Shown piece after piece: positions 24,183 to 63,622 of a stretch of 64,000 nt of DNA. The stretch is from Podarcis erhardii (taxonomy: Eukaryota). Location of the stretch: assembly GCA_964252035.1 (NCBI GenBank), contig OZ176201.1. The stretch is one strand, 5' to 3'. Below the pieces are notes generated by a model that did no database searches, was not told where the DNA came from, and saw only the letters and a list, made by a program, of their open reading frames with translations. Position 1 is the stretch's first letter, and the number at the start of each line of letters is the position of its first letter. The position numbers and the translations under genes were made by a program.

Positions 24183-24382
24183 GTAGGTGGCTTAGCTTCA
24201 CTTTGGTTGGCCTTGCTTAATACCAGTACATTTCTTTAGGATGTTGAGTCCGTCTGGAACAGTCTGGGCTTGGGAGAAGGTGCACTATGTGGTCTTTGTT
24301 CTTAGATCTTTTGTCTTAATGAACCATGGAGCAGGTGTTCGCTTGTTTTCTGTGTGTGACATTCTCCTTCCTGTTGTCTCAG

Positions 24383-24536
24383 CTGGTTCTGCAGGCCCGG
24401 AATGTCCCTGATCTCTCTGCTGGTGTGAACTGCTCATTTGAAGATTTTACAGAGTCTGAAAGTCGCATTGAAGATGGCAAGATCTACTGTAGTTCTCCTT
24501 CTGCAAAAGATGTCATCCCTATTACCAGAGGGCGAG
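24383..24536 (+). CDS. PLXNA1: Plexin A1 coding exon (154 nt, phase 0/1), IPT1: [51 protein letters not shown](G)
   Basis: Acceptor ttcctgttgtctcag|CTG, donor GAG|gtgagt; follows a 200-nt intron; overlaps ORF 24326..24631. Confidence 0.96.
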
Positions 24537-26257
24537 GTGAGTTTGGGGTTTCTTGTCAGCTTGCACCAATGGAATCCAGAGCAAAAGTTCTGGGGGGTAG
24601 GATATTTGATTACATACTTCAGAGAACATGAGTTTCCAAAAATCAAAACAAAAACAACCCCATTTGAGTAACACAATAGCTGAGCTAATATCTCTCAGTT
24701 TATTTATTGCCATGATGTAAGATGCTATGGATTATCCAGGTTATTTTTAAACCTGTTTGCTGCTGTGGGAAGGCTCTTTCTACTGTGCTTGTGTATGTGA
24801 TTTTGAGAGTATTCATATCCTATAATGCTGAGGGGGAATTGTAAGTTGTAGGCACCTTGGGGTGCACTTCCCCCTCCATTGGTATTTGTAGAGTGAAAAT
24901 AGACATTAACTTCCCTTGAAGGAGCTGAAGTGGCACAAAGGAGGAGCCATCTGCATCCTCTGCAGTGCGGTTGAATCTGGTATAAAGGCTTTCGCTCTGG
25001 ACAGCCAAGAATGTGAACTATGCAAAAGTATTTTTCTCTTTCTGTCTCCGCATGGAAGGCAGGCAGTCTAGACCTTTGTGCCATGGTAGGCTGTCCTTTG
25101 CTCAGTTCAGATAGCATGTCATATTTGAGGCACAGAGGAGTTCAAAATACCAATATCTATACCTCCTGTGAGAAGGATCAACATATTTGTGAGCAGGAGA
25201 GCAGAGACTGAGGCAGAGAATTTGAAGAAAGGAGAAGAAAGGGAGAAAGAAGGCAAATGACTGAAATGGGTGCATTTACAGAGTGGCAGGGAATATATTG
25301 TTACTATTCTATTTAGTAAGGAATGTATGTGCTACCCTTGGCCAAGGTGATTTACATGTCCTCACCATGGTTCGAAACTCCCACTGTTCTAGGCACATTT
25401 TGCGACAGGGAATTTCATTAGCGCGAGTAGTTTCTGAGCTCTGGGCGCAGTACTATGCCTAAGATTTCAGATTAAAACTGCAGAGTGGAAGGAGAGGAGG
25501 ACTTTTTTCTACCTCACCACATCCAGCTGCTCTCTGAAGACTGGAGAAGAGACCCTCTTAAGAATATTAGGGGGACGGGCAAGGGAAAGACTAGACCGTG
25601 TGAGAAATGAACATAATATTTTAGCTACAGTTCATTCATTTTCAGCTTTGTATTCTTGTTACAAAAAAGCATGCCTAGACATTCCGTTGTTGTGCCCATA
25701 ACCTAGGCTTAAGGTGCCATTTAGCTCCTAGCTTTCATATCTCAGTTTCTAACACTGGTTCTCACTATAACTGGGGATAGCAACATGAGACTGGTCCAGT
25801 GGTTTGCTTGGGCTGATTGCTGAGTAAGGCATAATTGTTACACACCTCCTAGATTCCTGGCCTCAAAATGATCGATAACCTACTGGTTTCCCAATAATTC
25901 CACAAGAGGCTCCTAAATTTGACAAAGTCAGATTCCCTCCTTACCTGTGGAGGTAGTAGAAAGCCAAATGTTAACTCTGAACTAGGCAGTTGGAGGCCTC
26001 TGGTACTCTTCTCCCACCTGTCATTTTACTTACATTCGGAGCAAGATCACCTATCCTCTGCTAGATTTTTAGTGCAGGTCAATCACACTTCTCTTCAACA
26101 TCAATAAACTAGTGTTTTTGTCTGCTAACTAGGATTCATTGGAACTGCCCCTCAGCTCAAACAAAGTCACTGCAAGCCTCACTCATTTGCGTGCTGCCAA
26201 ACCCTGCACTCTGTTTTCCCAGATGCCCATGCTGCTATTTCTCTCTTTAATATCTGA

Positions 26258-33278: not shown

Positions 33279-33758
33279 GTTCAAGAAGGACACTGACAAA
33301 CTGGAACGTGTCCAGAGGAGGGCAATCAAAATGGTCAAAGGCCTGGAAACGATGCCTTATGAGGAACGGCTAAGGGAGCTGGGCATGTTTAGCCTGGAGA
33401 AGAGGAGGTTAAGGGGTGATATGATAGCCATGTTCAAATATATAAAAGGATGTCACATAGAGGAGGGAGAAAGGTTGTTTTCTGCTGCTCCAGAGAAGCG
33501 GACACGGAGCAATGGTTCCAAACTACAAGAAAAAAGATTCCACCTAAACATTAGGAAGAACTTCCTGACAGTAAGAGCTGTTCGACAGTGGAATTTGCTG
33601 CCAAGGAGTGTGGTGGAGTCTCCTTCTCTGGAGGTTTTTAAGCAGAGGCTTGACAACCATATGTCAGGAGTGCTCTGATGGTGTTTCCTGCTTGGCAGGG
33701 GGTTGGACTTGATAGCCCTTGTGGTCTCTTCCAACTCTATGATTCTATGATTCTATGA
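33279..33758 (+). mobile_element. CR1 LINE, 5'-truncated and young; open ORF2 C-terminus and (ATTCTATG)n tail
   Basis: ORF 33331..33678 reads [61 protein letters not shown]; tail ctatgattctatgattctatga. Confidence 0.93.
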
Positions 33759-45560: not shown

Positions 45561-45882
45561 TGAGACTATGTGATGACGATACAGCGAAGGGACAGGGACA
45601 GCTAGTGTGGCCTTAACTACCCCCCCTTCACACAATTGTAATCACATTTGTTGTTGCTGTTATTTCATTTCATTTATGAATCACTTCTTATTAAGTATCT
45701 TGAAGCAATTTCACAGTGCAGTAGAAGCATGTATGAAACAAATTGCATGTATTGGAGCAGTTAAAACAATTGCATATATAAAAAACTATTTCATATCCAA
45801 TACAGAGCAAAATACAGATAAAAATCTCCACTTAGAAGGCTTATTGAAAGAGGAAGGAGAATGCCCCAATAAGGGAGGTAGA

Positions 45883-45950
<68 letters not shown>
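45883..45950. repeat. (GTCT)17 microsatellite
   Basis: Direct count; explains the DRQT/VCLS-repeat ORFs. Confidence 0.95.
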
Positions 45951-45954
<4 letters not shown>

Positions 45955-46559
45955 TGTTTTTGTGTGGGAGAGGGAGAGATGAAGTTGTTTTGGGCTTAGC
46001 TGCAAAATCTTCTCCCACCACAATCAGGAAGAAGGCTATTTTTGCCTTAATAGCAAAATGGTGAAATCTCTGTTTGTCTCTATACAACTGAAAAGGGAAG
46101 AGCTCCTGAATCCAACTTCTCCAGTGTGAACAGCTGGAGCCCCAAAGGAGAAGACTTTGCCAAAAGTTGCCTTGCTGTTCCATGTTGGAGAAAAGGGGGT
46201 TGGTTAGATTGCTAACTTGTGTCTCAGCAGACATAGCCAATGATGCTGGTGCTTCAAACACTGCACAGTTCAAAACGTGGCCCTTCTTAGTATTTGCTGA
46301 GCAGGACCTTAAGAACTGAGGAAATGATGTTCAAGGTCAGAAACTAGAGAAAATGGGAGATAAACAAGGCATTGAAGGAGAAGACTGTATGTATCAGAAC
46401 ACCAGGAAAATACATGGATCAAAACTTGTGACCAGAGGGAAGGGAGGAACATGATACGCACACAAACAGTGTGAGTGGGTAGGAGAGGAAGTAAAAGAAG
46501 GGAGTTGCAGTATGTGGCTGCATAAGCATATGAAAGACATTTACAGTCCCAAAATTTTA

Positions 46560-58070: not shown

Positions 58071-60787
58071 TGAAGGTTCCTATCATTCAATCACAATTTT
58101 GGAATAATGGATTTCATGCGTTGTTCTTAACTAACATTTACTCAAAATAGGCCCATTAATAGCCATTACTAACATAGGTCTGTTAGGTCTACTCTGAGTA
58201 AATATTAGTATTCAGAAGCCTATTATGCAAGTTAACTAAGCTGATTCGCATGTTTTCACTTACAGAAATTTTGGCAAGGCTTTTGATTGTGGACAAGAAA
58301 TGTAAGAGTTGTTTGGCATTATTTAGCAATAAGGTAAAGACAGGGGATGCTGAGCATGGGTAGAGAACTCCGATTCCTAAGGATACCTTTCCATGATCCC
58401 CTAAAAGGACACCCCACTTTTCACTTTTTAAAAATGTTCTTCTCTTGCAAACTCCTGTTCACTCAGAGCTCTGTTAACCACAGACCCCAAAAGTTGTGCT
58501 TTAGTTTTTTTGCACAGAGCAGAGCCCTCCCATCTTCTCAGCTGTTTCACGCAGGTGCAATTTTGCTAAATCAGGGATGTCCTTTAAAATGAGGGATATC
58601 CGAGAAGAGACCCCAGCAGATGTGATGTAGAGGCTTTCCTATTTATCTCTGAAATAATATGGCCTGACAGCTTGCTTTTCGAACTGGAGACTGGCATCCT
58701 GTGCGCTCAGAATTAGTTCAAAATTCCGTTGCTTGCAGTATCCATGAACGTACATGCTGAAAATATGCAGACCTGGCTAAGGAGATGACAGACCTGTGGA
58801 GTATGGGTAAGGGAGCGTTCTCATTAGTCCTTGGAATTGGCTGCTCCGGAAGAGGGAACAGCTGGGAAAGGCCTGGCCAGTGTCAGAGCCATTTCTGCTG
58901 TGTAGCTCCCAGCCCAGCATCACGAGTGCGGAACCATGAGACTCTTTAGGAAAGGCTCCTTAGCACCAGGTGTTTCCTGTTTTTGAGCGGGGCAAAATTG
59001 TTGCTGGATGACACACGGCTCCCTGTAGACGCCAAACATGTGACGTAGCAGGATTGAGCAGGGTCTGTCTCAAAAAGCCAGTCAGCAAAATGTGTGCATG
59101 TTTTGGGACAGAGGCTCTTAGCTCATGTACTCCATTTGCCGTGCACCCACATTTTGTATCCGTATGCTGGGTGTGTCCTTTTAGGCACTCTGTGTTTTGG
59201 GCTATGGTATTTAGGCATGTGCACCTAATCTGTTTGCCCAAGACACCCCAGAATTAGTGGATTTGATTCCAAAGGAGGACAAAGAGCTATGTGGGTGTTA
59301 TTTCCTGTATGTTAGTGAAATCATGGAATCTTGGGAGAGAAGTTAGTGCAACTCACCTTCTTAGAACCTCAAAAACTCAAGAGAACTTGAAACCTCAGGG
59401 TGTGGGTATGTATCTCCTGTACTGCTTTGACTTTGTGGTTTAATCCAGCGAGCAAAGCAAGTATTGTTCAAGGGTTAATGAGCTCCCATAAAGAACTTTG
59501 AGGTGTCCTGTTTTTGTGTAGTTGGAAACTGTTCCTGGAATAGACACACCCACTTCTGCTGTTCCTGCCTCTATTACAAGTTTGCTTACTGGAATTGGTG
59601 CTGGTGAGTTGGGCTGGGGGAAAGAGCTGGTCCGCCCCCTGTTGGAGTCTATGATGAATGTGTTTGCAGGCTCCTGAGCAAAGTTTCTGATCCTACCGCT
59701 GTTTGCTTCAAAACATGTTATTCTCCACCCTTTCCCTGTTATTTAAAGCAGGGATCCCTTCCCCCCCCCCCCAGGCCCAGTTTGACTCGCCTGGGGATTG
59801 CATCAGGCTATTGTTGCCAAAGTGGTACCCTCCTGGGATGCAGGGCTGTTTTCTTGCCTGGTCCTGTTTATTTTTATTCTCTCCCTGTGCTCTGCAACCT
59901 GGCTTTGGGGAGGTCAGGGTTGTCCTCTTGAGAGCAGCAAGGGATGCTGTACAGAGTTTTATGTGTCTGCTTTGCTAGGGTGCTGAACAGCCACTCAGTG
60001 AAGGAGACTGCGAAGGTTATGCCATGACTCAGGTGCTAGCTGAGCTCTTGGCTGGGTCAGCAAATAAACCCAGCCTCTGTCAGGTGCAGCTGCAACCTTT
60101 CCATCATGCATGCCCCTTTGCCTCCAGAGATGGGGCTGATGCAGCGATTGGTTGCCAGTGATTAGTGGGGACCTTGCAGATAAAGGAGCATGGGAGATAC
60201 TAGTGAGTACGGTTAGCAGGGCTGGATGCTGCTCTGAGAAATTCATCAGGATTGATTATTGGCTTCATTGAAATCCTAGAGGTGATTTCTTTACACTAGG
60301 ATAGGGCGAGTTTTCTAGGTCAGGCATGCTGAGAGAGCTGCAGTCAGAGCTATCATTTGGTTTGCAAGGCTTCATGTGCCAGCTTGGTGCTCTGCAGCTT
60401 GGGCTTGTTTACTTATTTATTATTTCAGTTTGTGTCCCTCCCCCCTTCGTCAAGTGCTGATGTCAGGGCAGGTCACAGAATAAAGTAAGGATATCCATTA
60501 ATTTCACAAAACAATAAAATTGCATAAAACAGGGATAGCTTCAAATGAAAGCATCATGCAACAATGCAGAAAGCAACCCCTTTACAGCTGGCAAATTGAT
60601 TCAATCCCCAACAAAGGCTTGAGTGAACATAGACTTTTTTACCTGGTGCTGAAAAATAAGCAACAATGATGCCAATCACACTACAAGGGGAAGGGAATTT
60701 CACTGCTGAAGTGCTACCATCTCACCTGACAAAACACACTTTCCCCTCTATCTGGAATGGCATGAGGACTTAAAATGGGGATAAAGG

Positions 60788-61126
60788 TAATAGTAGTGGT
60801 GGTGGTAGTAGTAGTAATAATATTAATAATATTAATAATATTAATAATAATAATTGTATACCACCATTCATTTGTACATCTCAGGTTGGCTCACAAAATA
60901 AAAATACAATATAAAACACACACCAATATAAAAACAATATAAAAACAAACCAAGAATCCCTCCCACAGCATATTTAAAAGGGCATCAGATGTTAATCAGC
61001 CCAAGGCCTGGTTGAAGAGGAACCTTTTCACCTGGCGCCTAAAAGTGTATAATGAAGGAGCCAGCTGAAGCTCCCTGGGGAGAACATTTGACAAATGGGG
61101 AGCCACTGCAGAGAAGGAGCATTCTT
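60788..61126 (-). mobile_element. L2 LINE 3' end, left part (interrupted by the ATP23 retrocopy), with TAA/TAG microsatellite tail
   Basis: Minus-strand translation AVAPHLSNVLPRELQLAPSLYTFRRQVKRFLFNQA resembles the L2 ORF2 C-terminus; A/T-rich 3' UTR; (TAATAATAT)n tail at ~60788-60853. Confidence 0.75.
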
Positions 61127-62205
61127 TTTTTTTTTTTAATGAAACAGCATTTATTAAACCAAGGATGAGAACCAAAGCATTTGCAAAATTAATTTCCAGT
61201 AGAATACTCACATAAACTTTTATGTGCACATGGGGGGGGGGCGCTGCTAGACCAATTTGTACACCAAACAAAACACAGAACAAAACACAGTTGTTTGTGG
61301 ACTTCCAGTTATCTTCACAATTAATCTTTTGAAAATTGTCCCCAAATGTTGTAGCAAGAAATGAACAGTTTTTGGCTAAAATTTTGCCTAGTACCGGTCA
61401 CAGTTTTGGAAATCTCTATGTGCATATTTTGCATCCGATCTGCTGTGAGGCACTCTGTCAAATGGCTCGTGGTCATTGAAACATGATTCAAAGACTTCAC
61501 CCACAGCTTTCTCGGCCATTTCTTTGCTGATGTTCCCAAGATGGAGCGAACAGCTCTGTCTTTTACACAAGTCTGCTGATGCTGCTTCAATCCAAATTTA
61601 AACCGGGTTATTTCATTTAGGAGGGAGCAATCACCACTAAGATTAACAGCTTGAATCTCCAAGCAAGCTAAATGCCTGATATTATTGAACCAGTCCACAT
61701 GTGCACGGCAGTGATCAGAAGCATGGAGAAGCTCATGTGCAACCACTCTGTTCATATGAGACTGGTGATGAATATTGTTTTGGCACAAAACAATCTGTGA
61801 TGTTGAAGAATCGAATCCTCCACTGACACACCCATCACACTCTTCACATGAGAAGTGTCGATCTTTGAAAACAGTGCAGCCAATATTCTTCATAGCATCA
61901 AGTAGCAGTTTAGCATATGCTTTCCAGGGCAATCTGCAGCATCACTGGCACCTGTGGTTCCTGGTGAAGACGGCCTTATAGAGCATGGACTGCTGCTGTT
62001 TCCCGCCTCTGTGGCTCCTCTTGGGAAACAGGCCGTACCCGAAGTCACTGTCCCACTCTCTGCCGGAGCCGCAGCTCCCCGGATCCTGTGGCTGCTCCGG
62101 AGGAGGCATCTCGGAAGAGCCTCCTTCAGCCATTCAAGCACGTCAGAAACAGCATGGCTTGGGAGGCCTCATCGGCCACCGCAGGTCACTCACCGTAGTG
62201 ATCAA
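61125..62205 (-). pseudogene. ATP23: Processed (intronless) pseudogene of ATP23, mitochondrial inner-membrane metalloprotease (XRCC6BP1/KUB3, peptidase M76)
   Basis: ORF pieces 61942..62133, 61321..61932 and 61388..61570 together give the ATP23 protein ([51 protein letters not shown]..; [16 protein letters not shown]). No introns. T13 at 61125-61137 (polyA on -), TTTATT at 61150-61155 (AATAAA on -), TSD AAGGAGCATTCTT 61114-61126 / AAGGATCATTCTT 62206-62218. In-frame TGA plus frameshifts. Confidence 0.92.
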
Positions 62206-62335
62206 AAGGATCATTCTTGTGCTGCCACCCTCAACCTCTTGTGGAGGAGGCCCACAAAGAAGGGACTCAGTTGGGTATGGATAGGTTCATATGAAGAGAG
62301 GCAATTCTTCAGGTATTGTGGTCCTGAGCCATGTT
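62206..62335 (-). mobile_element. L2 LINE, right part, continuing the same element beyond the retrocopy
   Basis: Minus strand reads GSGPQYLKNCLSSYEP.....SLLCGPPPQEV, the segment that precedes AFS.VAP.LWN.LP in L2 ORF2; it abuts the TSD. Confidence 0.7.
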
Positions 62336-63289
62336 AGCATCACTCCCAGTGCACTAGGGTGCATTGGTTCTTTTTTGACCTTTGTGCATTTAGTGCAGAC
62401 ATTTGAAGAGAGTTTCTGTGTGTGTTTGGTTGAGAACAGAAACCTTCTTTAGACCCCACACTCAACATTGTCACTATAGGGCTCAGGTGGTCCTGTTGAT
62501 GGGATGTGTGTCCACACCTGCCCAATGACATTATGACTGGGTGTATACCAATATTGCAATCTCCACTAACTTCTTTGTTCACTTAAGGCAGGACTTTATG
62601 CTTTATTCTGTTTTATGATCTGTATTACTATTTTTTATATGTGAATTATGTAGCTGCTTGGGTATGCTCTGAATGCAGACCCTGAAATAACAGTACAGAA
62701 GTACGAAAGGCTTTTGTGAATAACCTCTGCAGATATACCTAGTGTTTACTTGAGTTCATCTGAACACAGCCATAATAGCGTATGAACTGTTTACATCTAT
62801 TCTGAGGTCTGAATATAATGTTTACATAGACTAGAGAAACTGAGTGACAGATCATTTCTAACATAGCACTTACCATGGTTTGGAACTATGAAAGGGCTTG
62901 AGGAAATTGGGCAGGCAGTAGTCTAGTACTGTGCATGAGTTCCCTTTGGCAAGGTATATAGAGCCATGAAGAGGAGATTAATTGACAGAGATTTTAGAAC
63001 ATCAGAATCTGAGGGCAATCAACTGGAAGACGCATTAGCTAAGGTGGATTGATAGGAGCAAGAAGCTTATATTGAGAATATATCTGATTGGAGGTCAGCT
63101 TTTAGCCAATTCTTATCACCTGGTTGAGGAGCATATTTTATGAGTGCTCAATTTATTCTTGCAGAACTCTTATGTGTGGGGTAAAGTCTTTGTGCTGTGT
63201 GCTGCTTGAGACTATGATCTGTGGCTAATCATGACAATCTGAATTTGAAGATCTTAATGCTGACTGTTTTTCCCTCACCTCTCTCGCAG

Positions 63290-63490
63290 GACTGCCCACA
63301 GATCCTTCCATCTACCCAGATATATATCCCTGTGGGTGTGGTGAAGCCCATCACTTTGACTGCCAAAAACCTGCCACAGCCACAGTCTGGACAGCGCAAT
63401 TACGAGTGCATCTTCCATATCCCTGGCACATCCCAGCGTGTCACTGCCCTGCGCTTTAACAGCACCAGCATCCAGTGCCAAAACACTTCG
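63290..63490 (+). CDS. PLXNA1: Plexin A1 coding exon (201 nt, phase 0/0): [67 protein letters not shown]
   Basis: Acceptor ctctcgcag|GAC, donor TCG|gtgagt; overlaps ORF 63221..63520. Confidence 0.96.
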
Positions 63491-63622
63491 GTGAGTTTTT
63501 GGAATATAGTTATCTTTTGAGAAGGCTGCTTTGGGGAAATGCAGCAGAAATTCCCTGTTTGCCTCTTATGCATGTTTGGCCTCAACTGTGCATGTATCTG
63601 AGAGGAGATCACATGTTACCCT

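What the first reader, a model, noticed from the sequence alone, without database searches (positions are those of the whole stretch)
60788..62335. Near full-length ATP23 retrocopy inserted antisense in a PLXNA1 intron, splitting an L2 LINE
Seen in the sequence: the - strand has 72 nt of 5' UTR, an ATG at 62133, the whole ATP23 coding region without introns, ~250 nt of 3' UTR, AATAAA (61150-61155) 12 nt from a 13-nt poly(A), and a 13-bp TSD with one mismatch. L2 sequence on the two sides rejoins into one element, so the L2 came first and the retrocopy second. Established: poly(A) plus a TSD of this length is the signature of target-primed reverse transcription by L1-clade machinery; squamates have active L1 lineages, while CR1-dominated bird genomes have few retrocopies. 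Inference: this is a datable, lineage-restricted L1-type retrotransposition of a housekeeping mRNA. It is easy to miss because it is split across three ORFs.
Basis: partly seen in the sequence, partly recalled or inferred. Interest (0 to 1): 0.7.

Follow-up and report, generated by a model that had tools for sequence, protein, structure and literature searches.

The report
Dead ATP23 retrocopy in PLXNA1 intron
A lizard plexin-A1 intron holds a reverse-transcribed, intron-free copy of the housekeeping ATP23 mRNA that landed inside an older repeat and has decayed since, which makes it a clean but ordinary processed pseudogene.

Summary
On the minus strand, 62202-61138 matches all six exons of lacertid ATP23, and all five GT-AG introns are removed exactly. 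It carries 69 nt of parental 5' UTR, the coding region, the 3' UTR and AATAAA. A 13-nt untemplated poly(A) follows, and a 13-bp target-site duplication (12/13) flanks the insert.

The copy is dead. It has deletions of 1, 5 and 7 nt and a TAT>TAG stop. Its changes fit neutral decay: 21 of 50 are CpG transitions, and the nonsynonymous share is 0.62 against 0.69 expected.

Contigs from public runs show the same insertion at the same site in two related organisms, and less firmly in a third. The defects are nested: the stop and the 1-nt deletion occur only in the window and its nearest relative. A Podarcis muralis database protein (P0137) shares 11 derived residues, so a related copy probably exists there too.

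The flanks belong to one repeat family. Other copies of it run straight across the insertion point, so that repeat was there first. I could not test the name "L2" or the L1 agency.

The scan already noted this stretch and several other retrocopies in this genome. Interest is low.

The parts
62206..62218 (-). 5' copy of the target-site duplication (minus strand AAGAATGATCCTT)
   Evidence: 12/13 identical to the 3' copy
62203..62205 (-). 3 extra bases (TTG) between the TSD and the first base that matches the parental 5' UTR; origin uncertain (untemplated or cap-related)
   Evidence: exon 1 alignment
62134..62202 (-). 5' UTR of the ATP23 mRNA (69 nt matching the DNA upstream of the parental ATG)
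61376..62133 (-). ATP23 (Peptidase M76) coding remnant, ATG 62133-62131 to the original TAG 61378-61376. Exon junctions at 61918|61917, 61877|61876, 61795|61794, 61657|61656 and 61573|61572
61942..61945 (-). 1-nt deletion between 61945 and 61944, creating in-frame TGA (61944-61942); shared with organism A only
   Evidence: table 4
61917..61918 (-). 5-nt deletion exactly at the exon 1/exon 2 junction; shared with organism C
   Evidence: record 31 (356 letters on 355 places)
61535..61536 (-). 7-nt deletion (frameshift) in exon 6; shared with organisms B and C
   Evidence: table 4
61388..61390 (-). TAT>TAG nonsense change at codon 253; in the window and organism A only
   Evidence: table 3, place 61388
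61138..61375 (-). 3' UTR of the ATP23 mRNA, with a 19-nt deletion relative to the parents near 61289
61150..61155 (-). AATAAA polyadenylation signal, also present in the three parental genes
61125..61137 (-). 13-nt poly(A), untemplated: the parental genomic DNA continues tggtttggc at this point
61114..61126 (-). 3' copy of the target-site duplication (minus strand AAGAATGCTCCTT; its first two A's overlap the A run)
60799..61113 (-). 3' half of the older interspersed repeat, ending in a TAA/TAATAATAT microsatellite tail (60815-60854); summed contig depth about 1000-3000 times the single-copy level
   Evidence: table 2
62219..62352 (-). 5' half of the same repeat; pile-up about ten times lower than on the 3' half
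   Evidence: tables 2, 5, 5c, 7
63281..63499 (+). PLXNA1 exon (matches Plexin-A1 residues 667-739), context only
24377..24550 (+). PLXNA1 exon (matches Plexin-A1 residues 545-602), context only

Best explanation
This is a processed pseudogene. A mature, spliced and polyadenylated ATP23 mRNA, running from about 69 nt upstream of its ATG to its normal cleavage site, was reverse-transcribed into the genome. The mechanism was target-primed reverse transcription at a staggered nick, which gives the 13-bp duplication. The enzyme was most likely that of an L1-type LINE.

The copy landed antisense in a PLXNA1 intron, inside an older interspersed repeat of LINE 3'-end type. It brought no promoter. It was never under protein-level constraint and has decayed as methylated neutral DNA.

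The insertion predates the split between this genome and at least two related organisms, and probably also P. muralis. The disabling mutations accumulated stepwise afterwards.

Shown: the intron-free structure, the untemplated poly(A), the TSD, the split repeat, the sharing between organisms, and the neutral pattern of change.

Inferred: L1 as the enzyme source, and that the copy was non-functional from the start.
For: - Structure: the copy aligns to six exons of L002, L003 and L004, and the five introns are removed at canonical AG/GT borders.
- Tail: the poly(A) begins where the parental genomic DNA reads tggtttggc, 12 nt after a shared AATAAA.
- TSD: 12 of 13 alike, p = 6e-7 per offset.
- mRNA ends: a 1047-nt contig in a probable RNA run covers 61143-62154 with the parental states and all the deleted bases. 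The spliced mRNA therefore ends within 6 nt of where the retrocopy's A run begins (record 15).
- Same locus in relatives: records bridge the 5' junction in organism A (record 8) and both junctions in organism C (records 28 and 32).
- Decay: three frameshifting deletions and one stop.
- Mutation pattern: of 50 retro-only changes, 42 are transitions and 21 are CpG>TpG/CpA. The rate is 0.236 at CpG positions against 0.030 elsewhere.
- No selection signal: 21 nonsynonymous of 34 coding changes, against 0.69 expected from the observed mutation spectrum (p = 0.36). One stop is observed and 1.1 are expected.
- Early relaxation: five of the 11 replacements shared with P0137 fall at positions that never vary among the lacertid parents and the outgroup.
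- Split repeat: many contigs join 61117 to 62234 with 17-34 letters between. The family consensus behind 61117 is colinear with 61118-61126 plus 62219 onward, 21 of 30 bases with no indel (compared by eye).
Against: - The parent gene of this very assembly was not seen. Only parent-type short contigs in the nearest relative's run and full genes in three other lacertids were.
- The nick site on the sense strand, AC|AAGAAT, is only a loose fit to the L1 preference TT|AAAA.
- No L1 was examined here.
- P0137 from P. muralis is an open 246-residue model, which could mean the copy stayed coding for a while in that lineage.
- No empty site was found in any organism, so the order of events rests on the colinearity of the repeat, not on a pre-insertion allele.
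Confidence: 0.93

Rival explanations
1. The copy is, or was until recently, a working ATP23 retrogene. It would have been expressed from a borrowed promoter, and this genome would merely have lost it.
For: P0137 (UniRef A0A670IXP6, P. muralis) is a 246-residue open model with none of the three deletions and an HExxH motif (HEFLH). The raw pN/pS on the retro branch is 0.42.
Against: - The window copy has four disabling changes. Organisms B and C share the 7-nt deletion, and C also shares the 5-nt deletion.
- Once the mutation spectrum is taken into account, the nonsynonymous share is as expected for neutral change.
- Replacements shared by both copies hit invariant positions: S160L, R163Q, A165V, M177I and I138L. 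P0137 itself changes the invariant H143 and lacks an initiator Met.
- The only contig on the copy in the probable RNA run is of parental type.
Confidence: 0.04
2. The mRNA was copied by a LINE of another clade present in lizards (L2, CR1, BovB/RTE) rather than by L1.
For: Lizard genomes carry several LINE clades. The insertion lies within a CR1/L2-type repeat tail, and the nick site is not a textbook TT|AAAA.
Against: From established knowledge, CR1, L2 and RTE enzymes recognise their own 3' ends and leave microsatellite tails. A poly(A) tail at the mRNA's own cleavage site plus a 13-bp TSD is the L1-type signature. The TSD begins with a purine-rich AAGAA, as L1 sites do. Earlier notes of this scan report L1 and L1-dependent elements in this genome. 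Those are AI notes and I did not test them.
Confidence: 0.03

Closest known systems
L1-mediated processed pseudogenes (retrocopies) of vertebrate housekeeping genes
   Same: Intron-free and full-length, from the 5' UTR to the normal poly(A) site. It has an untemplated poly(A), a 13-bp TSD, no promoter, frameshifts and stops, and CpG decay.
   Different: The host is a lacertid lizard, not a mammal. The nick site is a loose variant of TT|AAAA. The enzyme source was not shown.
UniRef A0A670IXP6 (P0137), an ATP23-like model of Podarcis muralis
   Same: It shares 11 derived residues with the window copy against all parental ATP23 proteins, including the [24 protein letters not shown] block and the C-terminal AKF. 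It most likely comes from the same retroposition event.
   Different: It has no deletions or stops, carries 8 private replacements, and starts without a Met. Its genomic place could not be fetched, so orthology is inferred.
Parental ATP23 (mitochondrial inner membrane protease ATP23 homolog, Peptidase M76) of lacertids: P0131, P0002, P0130
   Same: 93-94% nucleotide identity over about 1040 aligned positions.
   Different: The parents have six exons and five introns next to an RPAP3-like gene, with an intact 256-codon frame.
Other retrocopies noted by this scan in the same genome (LSP1, PPDPF, RPS21, MCTS1, MHC class I)
   Same: The same kind of event in the same genome (AI notes, which I did not check).
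   Different: Different parent genes and ages. The MCTS1 copy was reported as constrained, and this one is not.

Membership tests
Processed pseudogene made by L1-type target-primed reverse transcription | Colinear with the spliced mRNA, with all introns removed exactly | tested here: met
   Five GT-AG introns of L002, L003 and L004 are absent at exact junctions
Processed pseudogene made by L1-type target-primed reverse transcription | A separate intron-containing parent gene exists | tested here: met
   Parent genes in P. muralis, Zootoca and L. agilis. Parent-type contigs sit beside retro-type contigs in organisms A and B. The parent was not seen in this assembly itself
Processed pseudogene made by L1-type target-primed reverse transcription | Untemplated poly(A) at the mRNA cleavage site, downstream of AATAAA | tested here: met
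   A13 sits 12 nt after AATAAA, and the parental DNA has no A run there
Processed pseudogene made by L1-type target-primed reverse transcription | Target-site duplication of about 7-20 bp directly flanking the insert | tested here: met
   13 bp, 12/13 alike, p = 6e-7 per offset
Processed pseudogene made by L1-type target-primed reverse transcription | Nick site resembling TT|AAAA | tested here: inconclusive
   The sense strand reads AC|AAGAAT: purine-rich after the nick, but not TT before it
Processed pseudogene made by L1-type target-primed reverse transcription | L1 reverse transcriptase was the agent | not testable with these tools
   Inferred from the poly(A) and the TSD only
Processed pseudogene made by L1-type target-primed reverse transcription | Non-functional: disabled frame and neutral change | tested here: met
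   Three frameshifting deletions and one stop. The nonsynonymous share is 0.62 against 0.69 expected. CpG sites change 8 times faster than other sites
L2-clade LINE (the flanking repeat) | Sequence match to an L2 consensus, or an L2-type reverse transcriptase upstream | not testable with these tools
   No repeat library was on hand. There is no RT frame in the about 130 nt of 5' half. No other copy lies in the window or in the three fetched loci. The Atlas and Rfam gave nothing
L2-clade LINE (the flanking repeat) | Microsatellite 3' tail instead of poly(A) | tested here: met
   A TAA/TAATAATAT array at 60815-60854 lies at the 3' end of the element
L2-clade LINE (the flanking repeat) | Multicopy, with copies thinning out towards the 5' end | tested here: met
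   Summed depth is about 1.2e5-2.9e5 at 60910-61131 and about 3e4 at 62242-62352, against about 100 for single-copy flanks. Depth is a rough guide, not a copy number. No tRNA-like head was found
Functional retrogene | Intact reading frame | tested here: not met
   Stop at codon 64, two further frameshifts, and a stop at codon 253
Functional retrogene | Transcription of the copy | tested here: inconclusive
   The one probable RNA run laid holds only the parental mRNA over this stretch. Contigs cannot show absence
Peptidase M76 / ATP23 | Match to the family profile, with the HExxH motif | tested here: met
   PF09768 at 3e-38 and 5.7e-06. HELLH is retained in the conceptual reading. This is membership by descent only, since the frame is broken

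The most novel reading that the evidence does not exclude
The same retroposition event gave a copy that remained, or still is, protein-coding in Podarcis muralis (the open 246-residue model A0A670IXP6). ATP23 would then have had a lineage-specific second, intronless gene in wall lizards, later lost in the lineage of this genome.
Probability: 0.04. Interest if true: 0.35.

Novelty: new member of a known kind. Interest (0 to 1): 0.12.

Why it matters
This is a textbook-clean retrocopy in a squamate. It has both mRNA ends, the tail, the duplication and a split older repeat, and its defects are nested across related species. That makes it a usable presence/absence and decay marker for lacertid phylogeny, and one more data point that poly(A)-dependent retroposition works on cellular mRNAs in lizards. 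A recent survey of 244 vertebrate genomes already reports that retrocopies dominate lepidosaur pseudogenes and are rare in birds (bioRxiv 10.64898/2026.06.26.734816). This finding therefore changes no view of the field.

Tried and rejected
- Other copies of the flanking repeat were sought in the window and in the three parental loci, at word sizes 9 and 7. None were found, so colinearity had to come from public runs.
- ARAGORN found no tRNA-like head in 60700-62900.
- Rfam gave no match up to E = 1 on 60600-62700.
- The ESM Atlas gave no usable hit for the 42-residue frame of the repeat's 3' half.
- The look-up of encoding contigs has no record of P0137, so its locus could not be read.
- Findings searches by sequence and by words for the repeat were blank.
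- The idea that the retrocopy predates the Podarcis/Lacerta/Zootoca split was rejected as unsupported. Only 4 sites show retro = outgroup against all three parents, and about 2-3 are expected from chance convergence (my estimate from the counts). The 4 sites where retro = L. agilis alone are too few to place it.
- P0134 (133 aa, P. muralis) was considered as a second locus. It is the parent read into intron 3, not the retrocopy.
All comparisons were made exon by exon against the natural window sequence, so no tree was made on a concatenated alignment.

Full report
**What is there**

The minus strand of 62218-61114 reads, in order:
- a 13-nt direct repeat (AAGAATGATCCTT);
- three extra bases (TTG);
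- 69 nt that match the DNA just upstream of the ATP23 start codon in lacertids;
- an ATG at 62133;
- an ATP23 coding region;
- about 238 nt of 3' UTR, with AATAAA at 61155-61150;
- 12 more bases, then 13 A's (61137-61125);
- the direct repeat again (AAGAATGCTCCTT).

A 12-of-13 match at one fixed offset has a chance of 6e-7. The translated pieces hit Pfam Peptidase_M76 at 3e-38 and 5.7e-06. Their best database relatives are lacertid "mitochondrial inner membrane protease ATP23 homolog" proteins at 89-90% identity.

**Host gene**

Two plus-strand exons, at about 24377-24550 and 63281-63499, match Plexin-A1 residues 545-602 and 667-739. Both score clearly better against A1 than against A2 or A4. 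The insert is therefore intronic and antisense to PLXNA1. An exon for residues of about 603-666 must lie somewhere between these two. I did not locate it, so the intron number is open.

**It is a copy of a spliced mRNA**

I fetched the ATP23 genes of Podarcis muralis (L002), Zootoca vivipara (L003) and Lacerta agilis (L004). Each has six exons and five introns with canonical AG/GT borders. The window sequence 62202-61138 aligns to the six exons in order. The junctions fall at 61918|61917, 61877|61876, 61795|61794, 61657|61656 and 61573|61572.

The parental genomic DNA shares the AATAAA and the next 12-14 bases, then continues tggtttggc where the window has its A run. The tail is therefore untemplated.

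A 1047-nt contig from a probable RNA run of a related organism (X15, record 15) covers 61143-62154. It carries the parental state at the retro-specific sites and all the bases that the retrocopy lacks. This is the spliced parental mRNA, and it ends within 6 nt of where the retrocopy's A run begins.

All comparisons were made exon by exon against the natural window sequence. I built and searched no joined parental model, and for that reason made no tree on a concatenated alignment.

**It is dead and changes neutrally**

Against the three parents, the window copy has:
- a 1-nt deletion between 61945 and 61944, which creates TGA at codon 64;
- a 5-nt deletion exactly at the exon 1/2 junction, which restores the frame;
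- a 7-nt deletion between 61536 and 61535;
- TAT>TAG at codon 253 (61390-61388);
- a 19-nt deletion in the 3' UTR.

Of 1040 aligned columns, 50 differ in the retrocopy alone. The terminal branches of the three parents carry 18, 29 and 13 changes.

Of the 50 retro-only changes, 42 are transitions and 21 are CpG>TpG/CpA. The rate is 0.236 at CpG positions and 0.030 elsewhere. This is the pattern of methylated, unconstrained DNA.

In the coding part there are 21 nonsynonymous and 13 synonymous changes. The raw pN/pS of 0.42 looks like constraint. Under the observed mutation spectrum, however, the expected nonsynonymous share is 0.69 against 0.62 observed (p = 0.36). The expected number of stops is 1.1 and one is observed.

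**Shared with relatives, with nested defects**

One search found 20 runs from nine studies that hold part of the stretch. Organisms are coded. I laid four runs.
- Organism A, about 0.3% different in the flanks: record 8 bridges the 5' junction (62107-63100).
- Organism C, about 1.3% different: record 28 bridges the 3' junction (61025-61178), record 32 bridges the 5' junction (62173-63100), and record 31 runs intron-free over 61848-62202.
- Organism B has retro-type contigs.

The defects are nested:

| Defect | Present in | Absent from |
|---|---|---|
| 7-nt deletion | window, B, C | not covered by a retro-type contig in A |
| 5-nt deletion | window, C (record 31 has 356 letters on 355 places) | not shown for A or B |
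| 1-nt deletion | window, A | B, C (they keep a C, reading CTG) |
| TAG stop | window, A | B, C |

Parent-type contigs lie beside the retro-type ones in A and B.

**A probable copy in P. muralis**

The 90% cluster of lacertid ATP23 proteins holds one odd member, P0137 (UniRef A0A670IXP6, P. muralis, 246 aa). It shares 11 derived residues with the window copy against all the parents: R21C, W27, R41H, K46Q, I138L, S160L, R163Q, A165V, M177I and the C-terminal AKF. It has 8 private changes, against 9 in the window copy. It has none of the deletions, reads CTG at the site of the 1-nt deletion as B and C do, and lacks an initiator Met.

I read it as a gene model laid on the P. muralis copy from the same retroposition event. 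Its locus could not be fetched, so that is an inference. Five of the 11 shared changes hit positions that never vary in the parents and the outgroup, and P0137 itself changes the invariant H143. This argues against a period of constraint.

**The flanks**

Summed contig depth is about 100 in the unique flanks. It rises to about 1.2e5-2.9e5 over 60910-61131 and about 3e4 over 62242-62352 (table 2). Both flanks are therefore multicopy, and the 3' half is about ten times more abundant.

Many contigs join 61117 to 62233-62235 with 17-34 letters between, where 24 are expected. The consensus of the loose ends behind 61117 is the same in three organisms. It is colinear with 61118-61126 followed by 62219 onward, 21 of 30 bases with no indel, and it carries only one copy of the duplicated 13-mer. 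I made this comparison by eye.

One repeat was therefore split by the insertion, so it is older. It ends in a TAA-type microsatellite and has no tRNA-like head. That fits a 5'-truncated LINE of the CR1/L2 type. No repeat library was on hand, so the name L2 is untested.

**Mechanism**

The poly(A) at the mRNA's own cleavage site, the 13-bp duplication and a duplication that begins with AAGAA form the signature of poly(A)-dependent target-primed reverse transcription, as done by L1. This rests on established knowledge and was not tested here. The nick site AC|AAGAAT is only a loose fit to TT|AAAA. Earlier notes of this scan report L1 derivatives and several other retrocopies in this genome, which other agents took for a wall lizard (Podarcis). 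Those are unchecked AI notes, used only as context.

**Age**

The retrocopy's position relative to the Podarcis/Lacerta/Zootoca split is unresolved. Four sites support an earlier origin, and by my estimate from the counts about 2-3 would arise from chance convergence. The non-CpG divergence of 3.0% on its branch suggests tens of millions of years under commonly assumed squamate rates. The rate is an assumption, not measured here.

**Verdict**

The kind is long known and common in lepidosaurs (bioRxiv 10.64898/2026.06.26.734816). It is a new member of a known kind, and of low interest.

Noticed in passing
window 33331-33678 (+): A 115-aa open frame that, from memory, looks like the C-terminal end of a CR1-type LINE ORF2 (…[30 protein letters not shown]…). 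Probably a CR1 3' fragment in the same PLXNA1 intron.
   Followed up: no
window 62464-62574: A second, smaller multicopy patch upstream of the split repeat. Summed contig depth is about 1400-1700 against about 100 in the neighbouring unique DNA (table 2). Family unknown.
   Followed up: no
window about 45880-45990: Overlapping ORFs on both strands read SVCL and RQTD repeats, so a (GTCT/GACA)-type tetranucleotide microsatellite lies here.
   Followed up: no
P0134 (XP_028572604.1, P. muralis, 133 aa): This annotated 'ATP23 isoform' is the parent read straight from exon 3 into intron 3 (…SQ|VGTE… equals CAG|gtaggtacggag in L002). It is an intron-retention model, not a second gene.
   Followed up: partly
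window 24631-63221: The two PLXNA1 exons found leave Plexin-A1 residues of about 603-666 unaccounted for. At least one more small exon must lie in this 38-kb span, and I did not locate it.
   Followed up: no
window 61944 versus L002-L004: At the codon after CQ, the P. muralis parent, the outgroup transcript, and the parent-type sequences of organisms A and H read GTG. Zootoca, the L. agilis parent and the retrocopies of B, C and P0137 read CTG. This may be an old polymorphism or a parallel change at the time of retroposition.
   Followed up: partly
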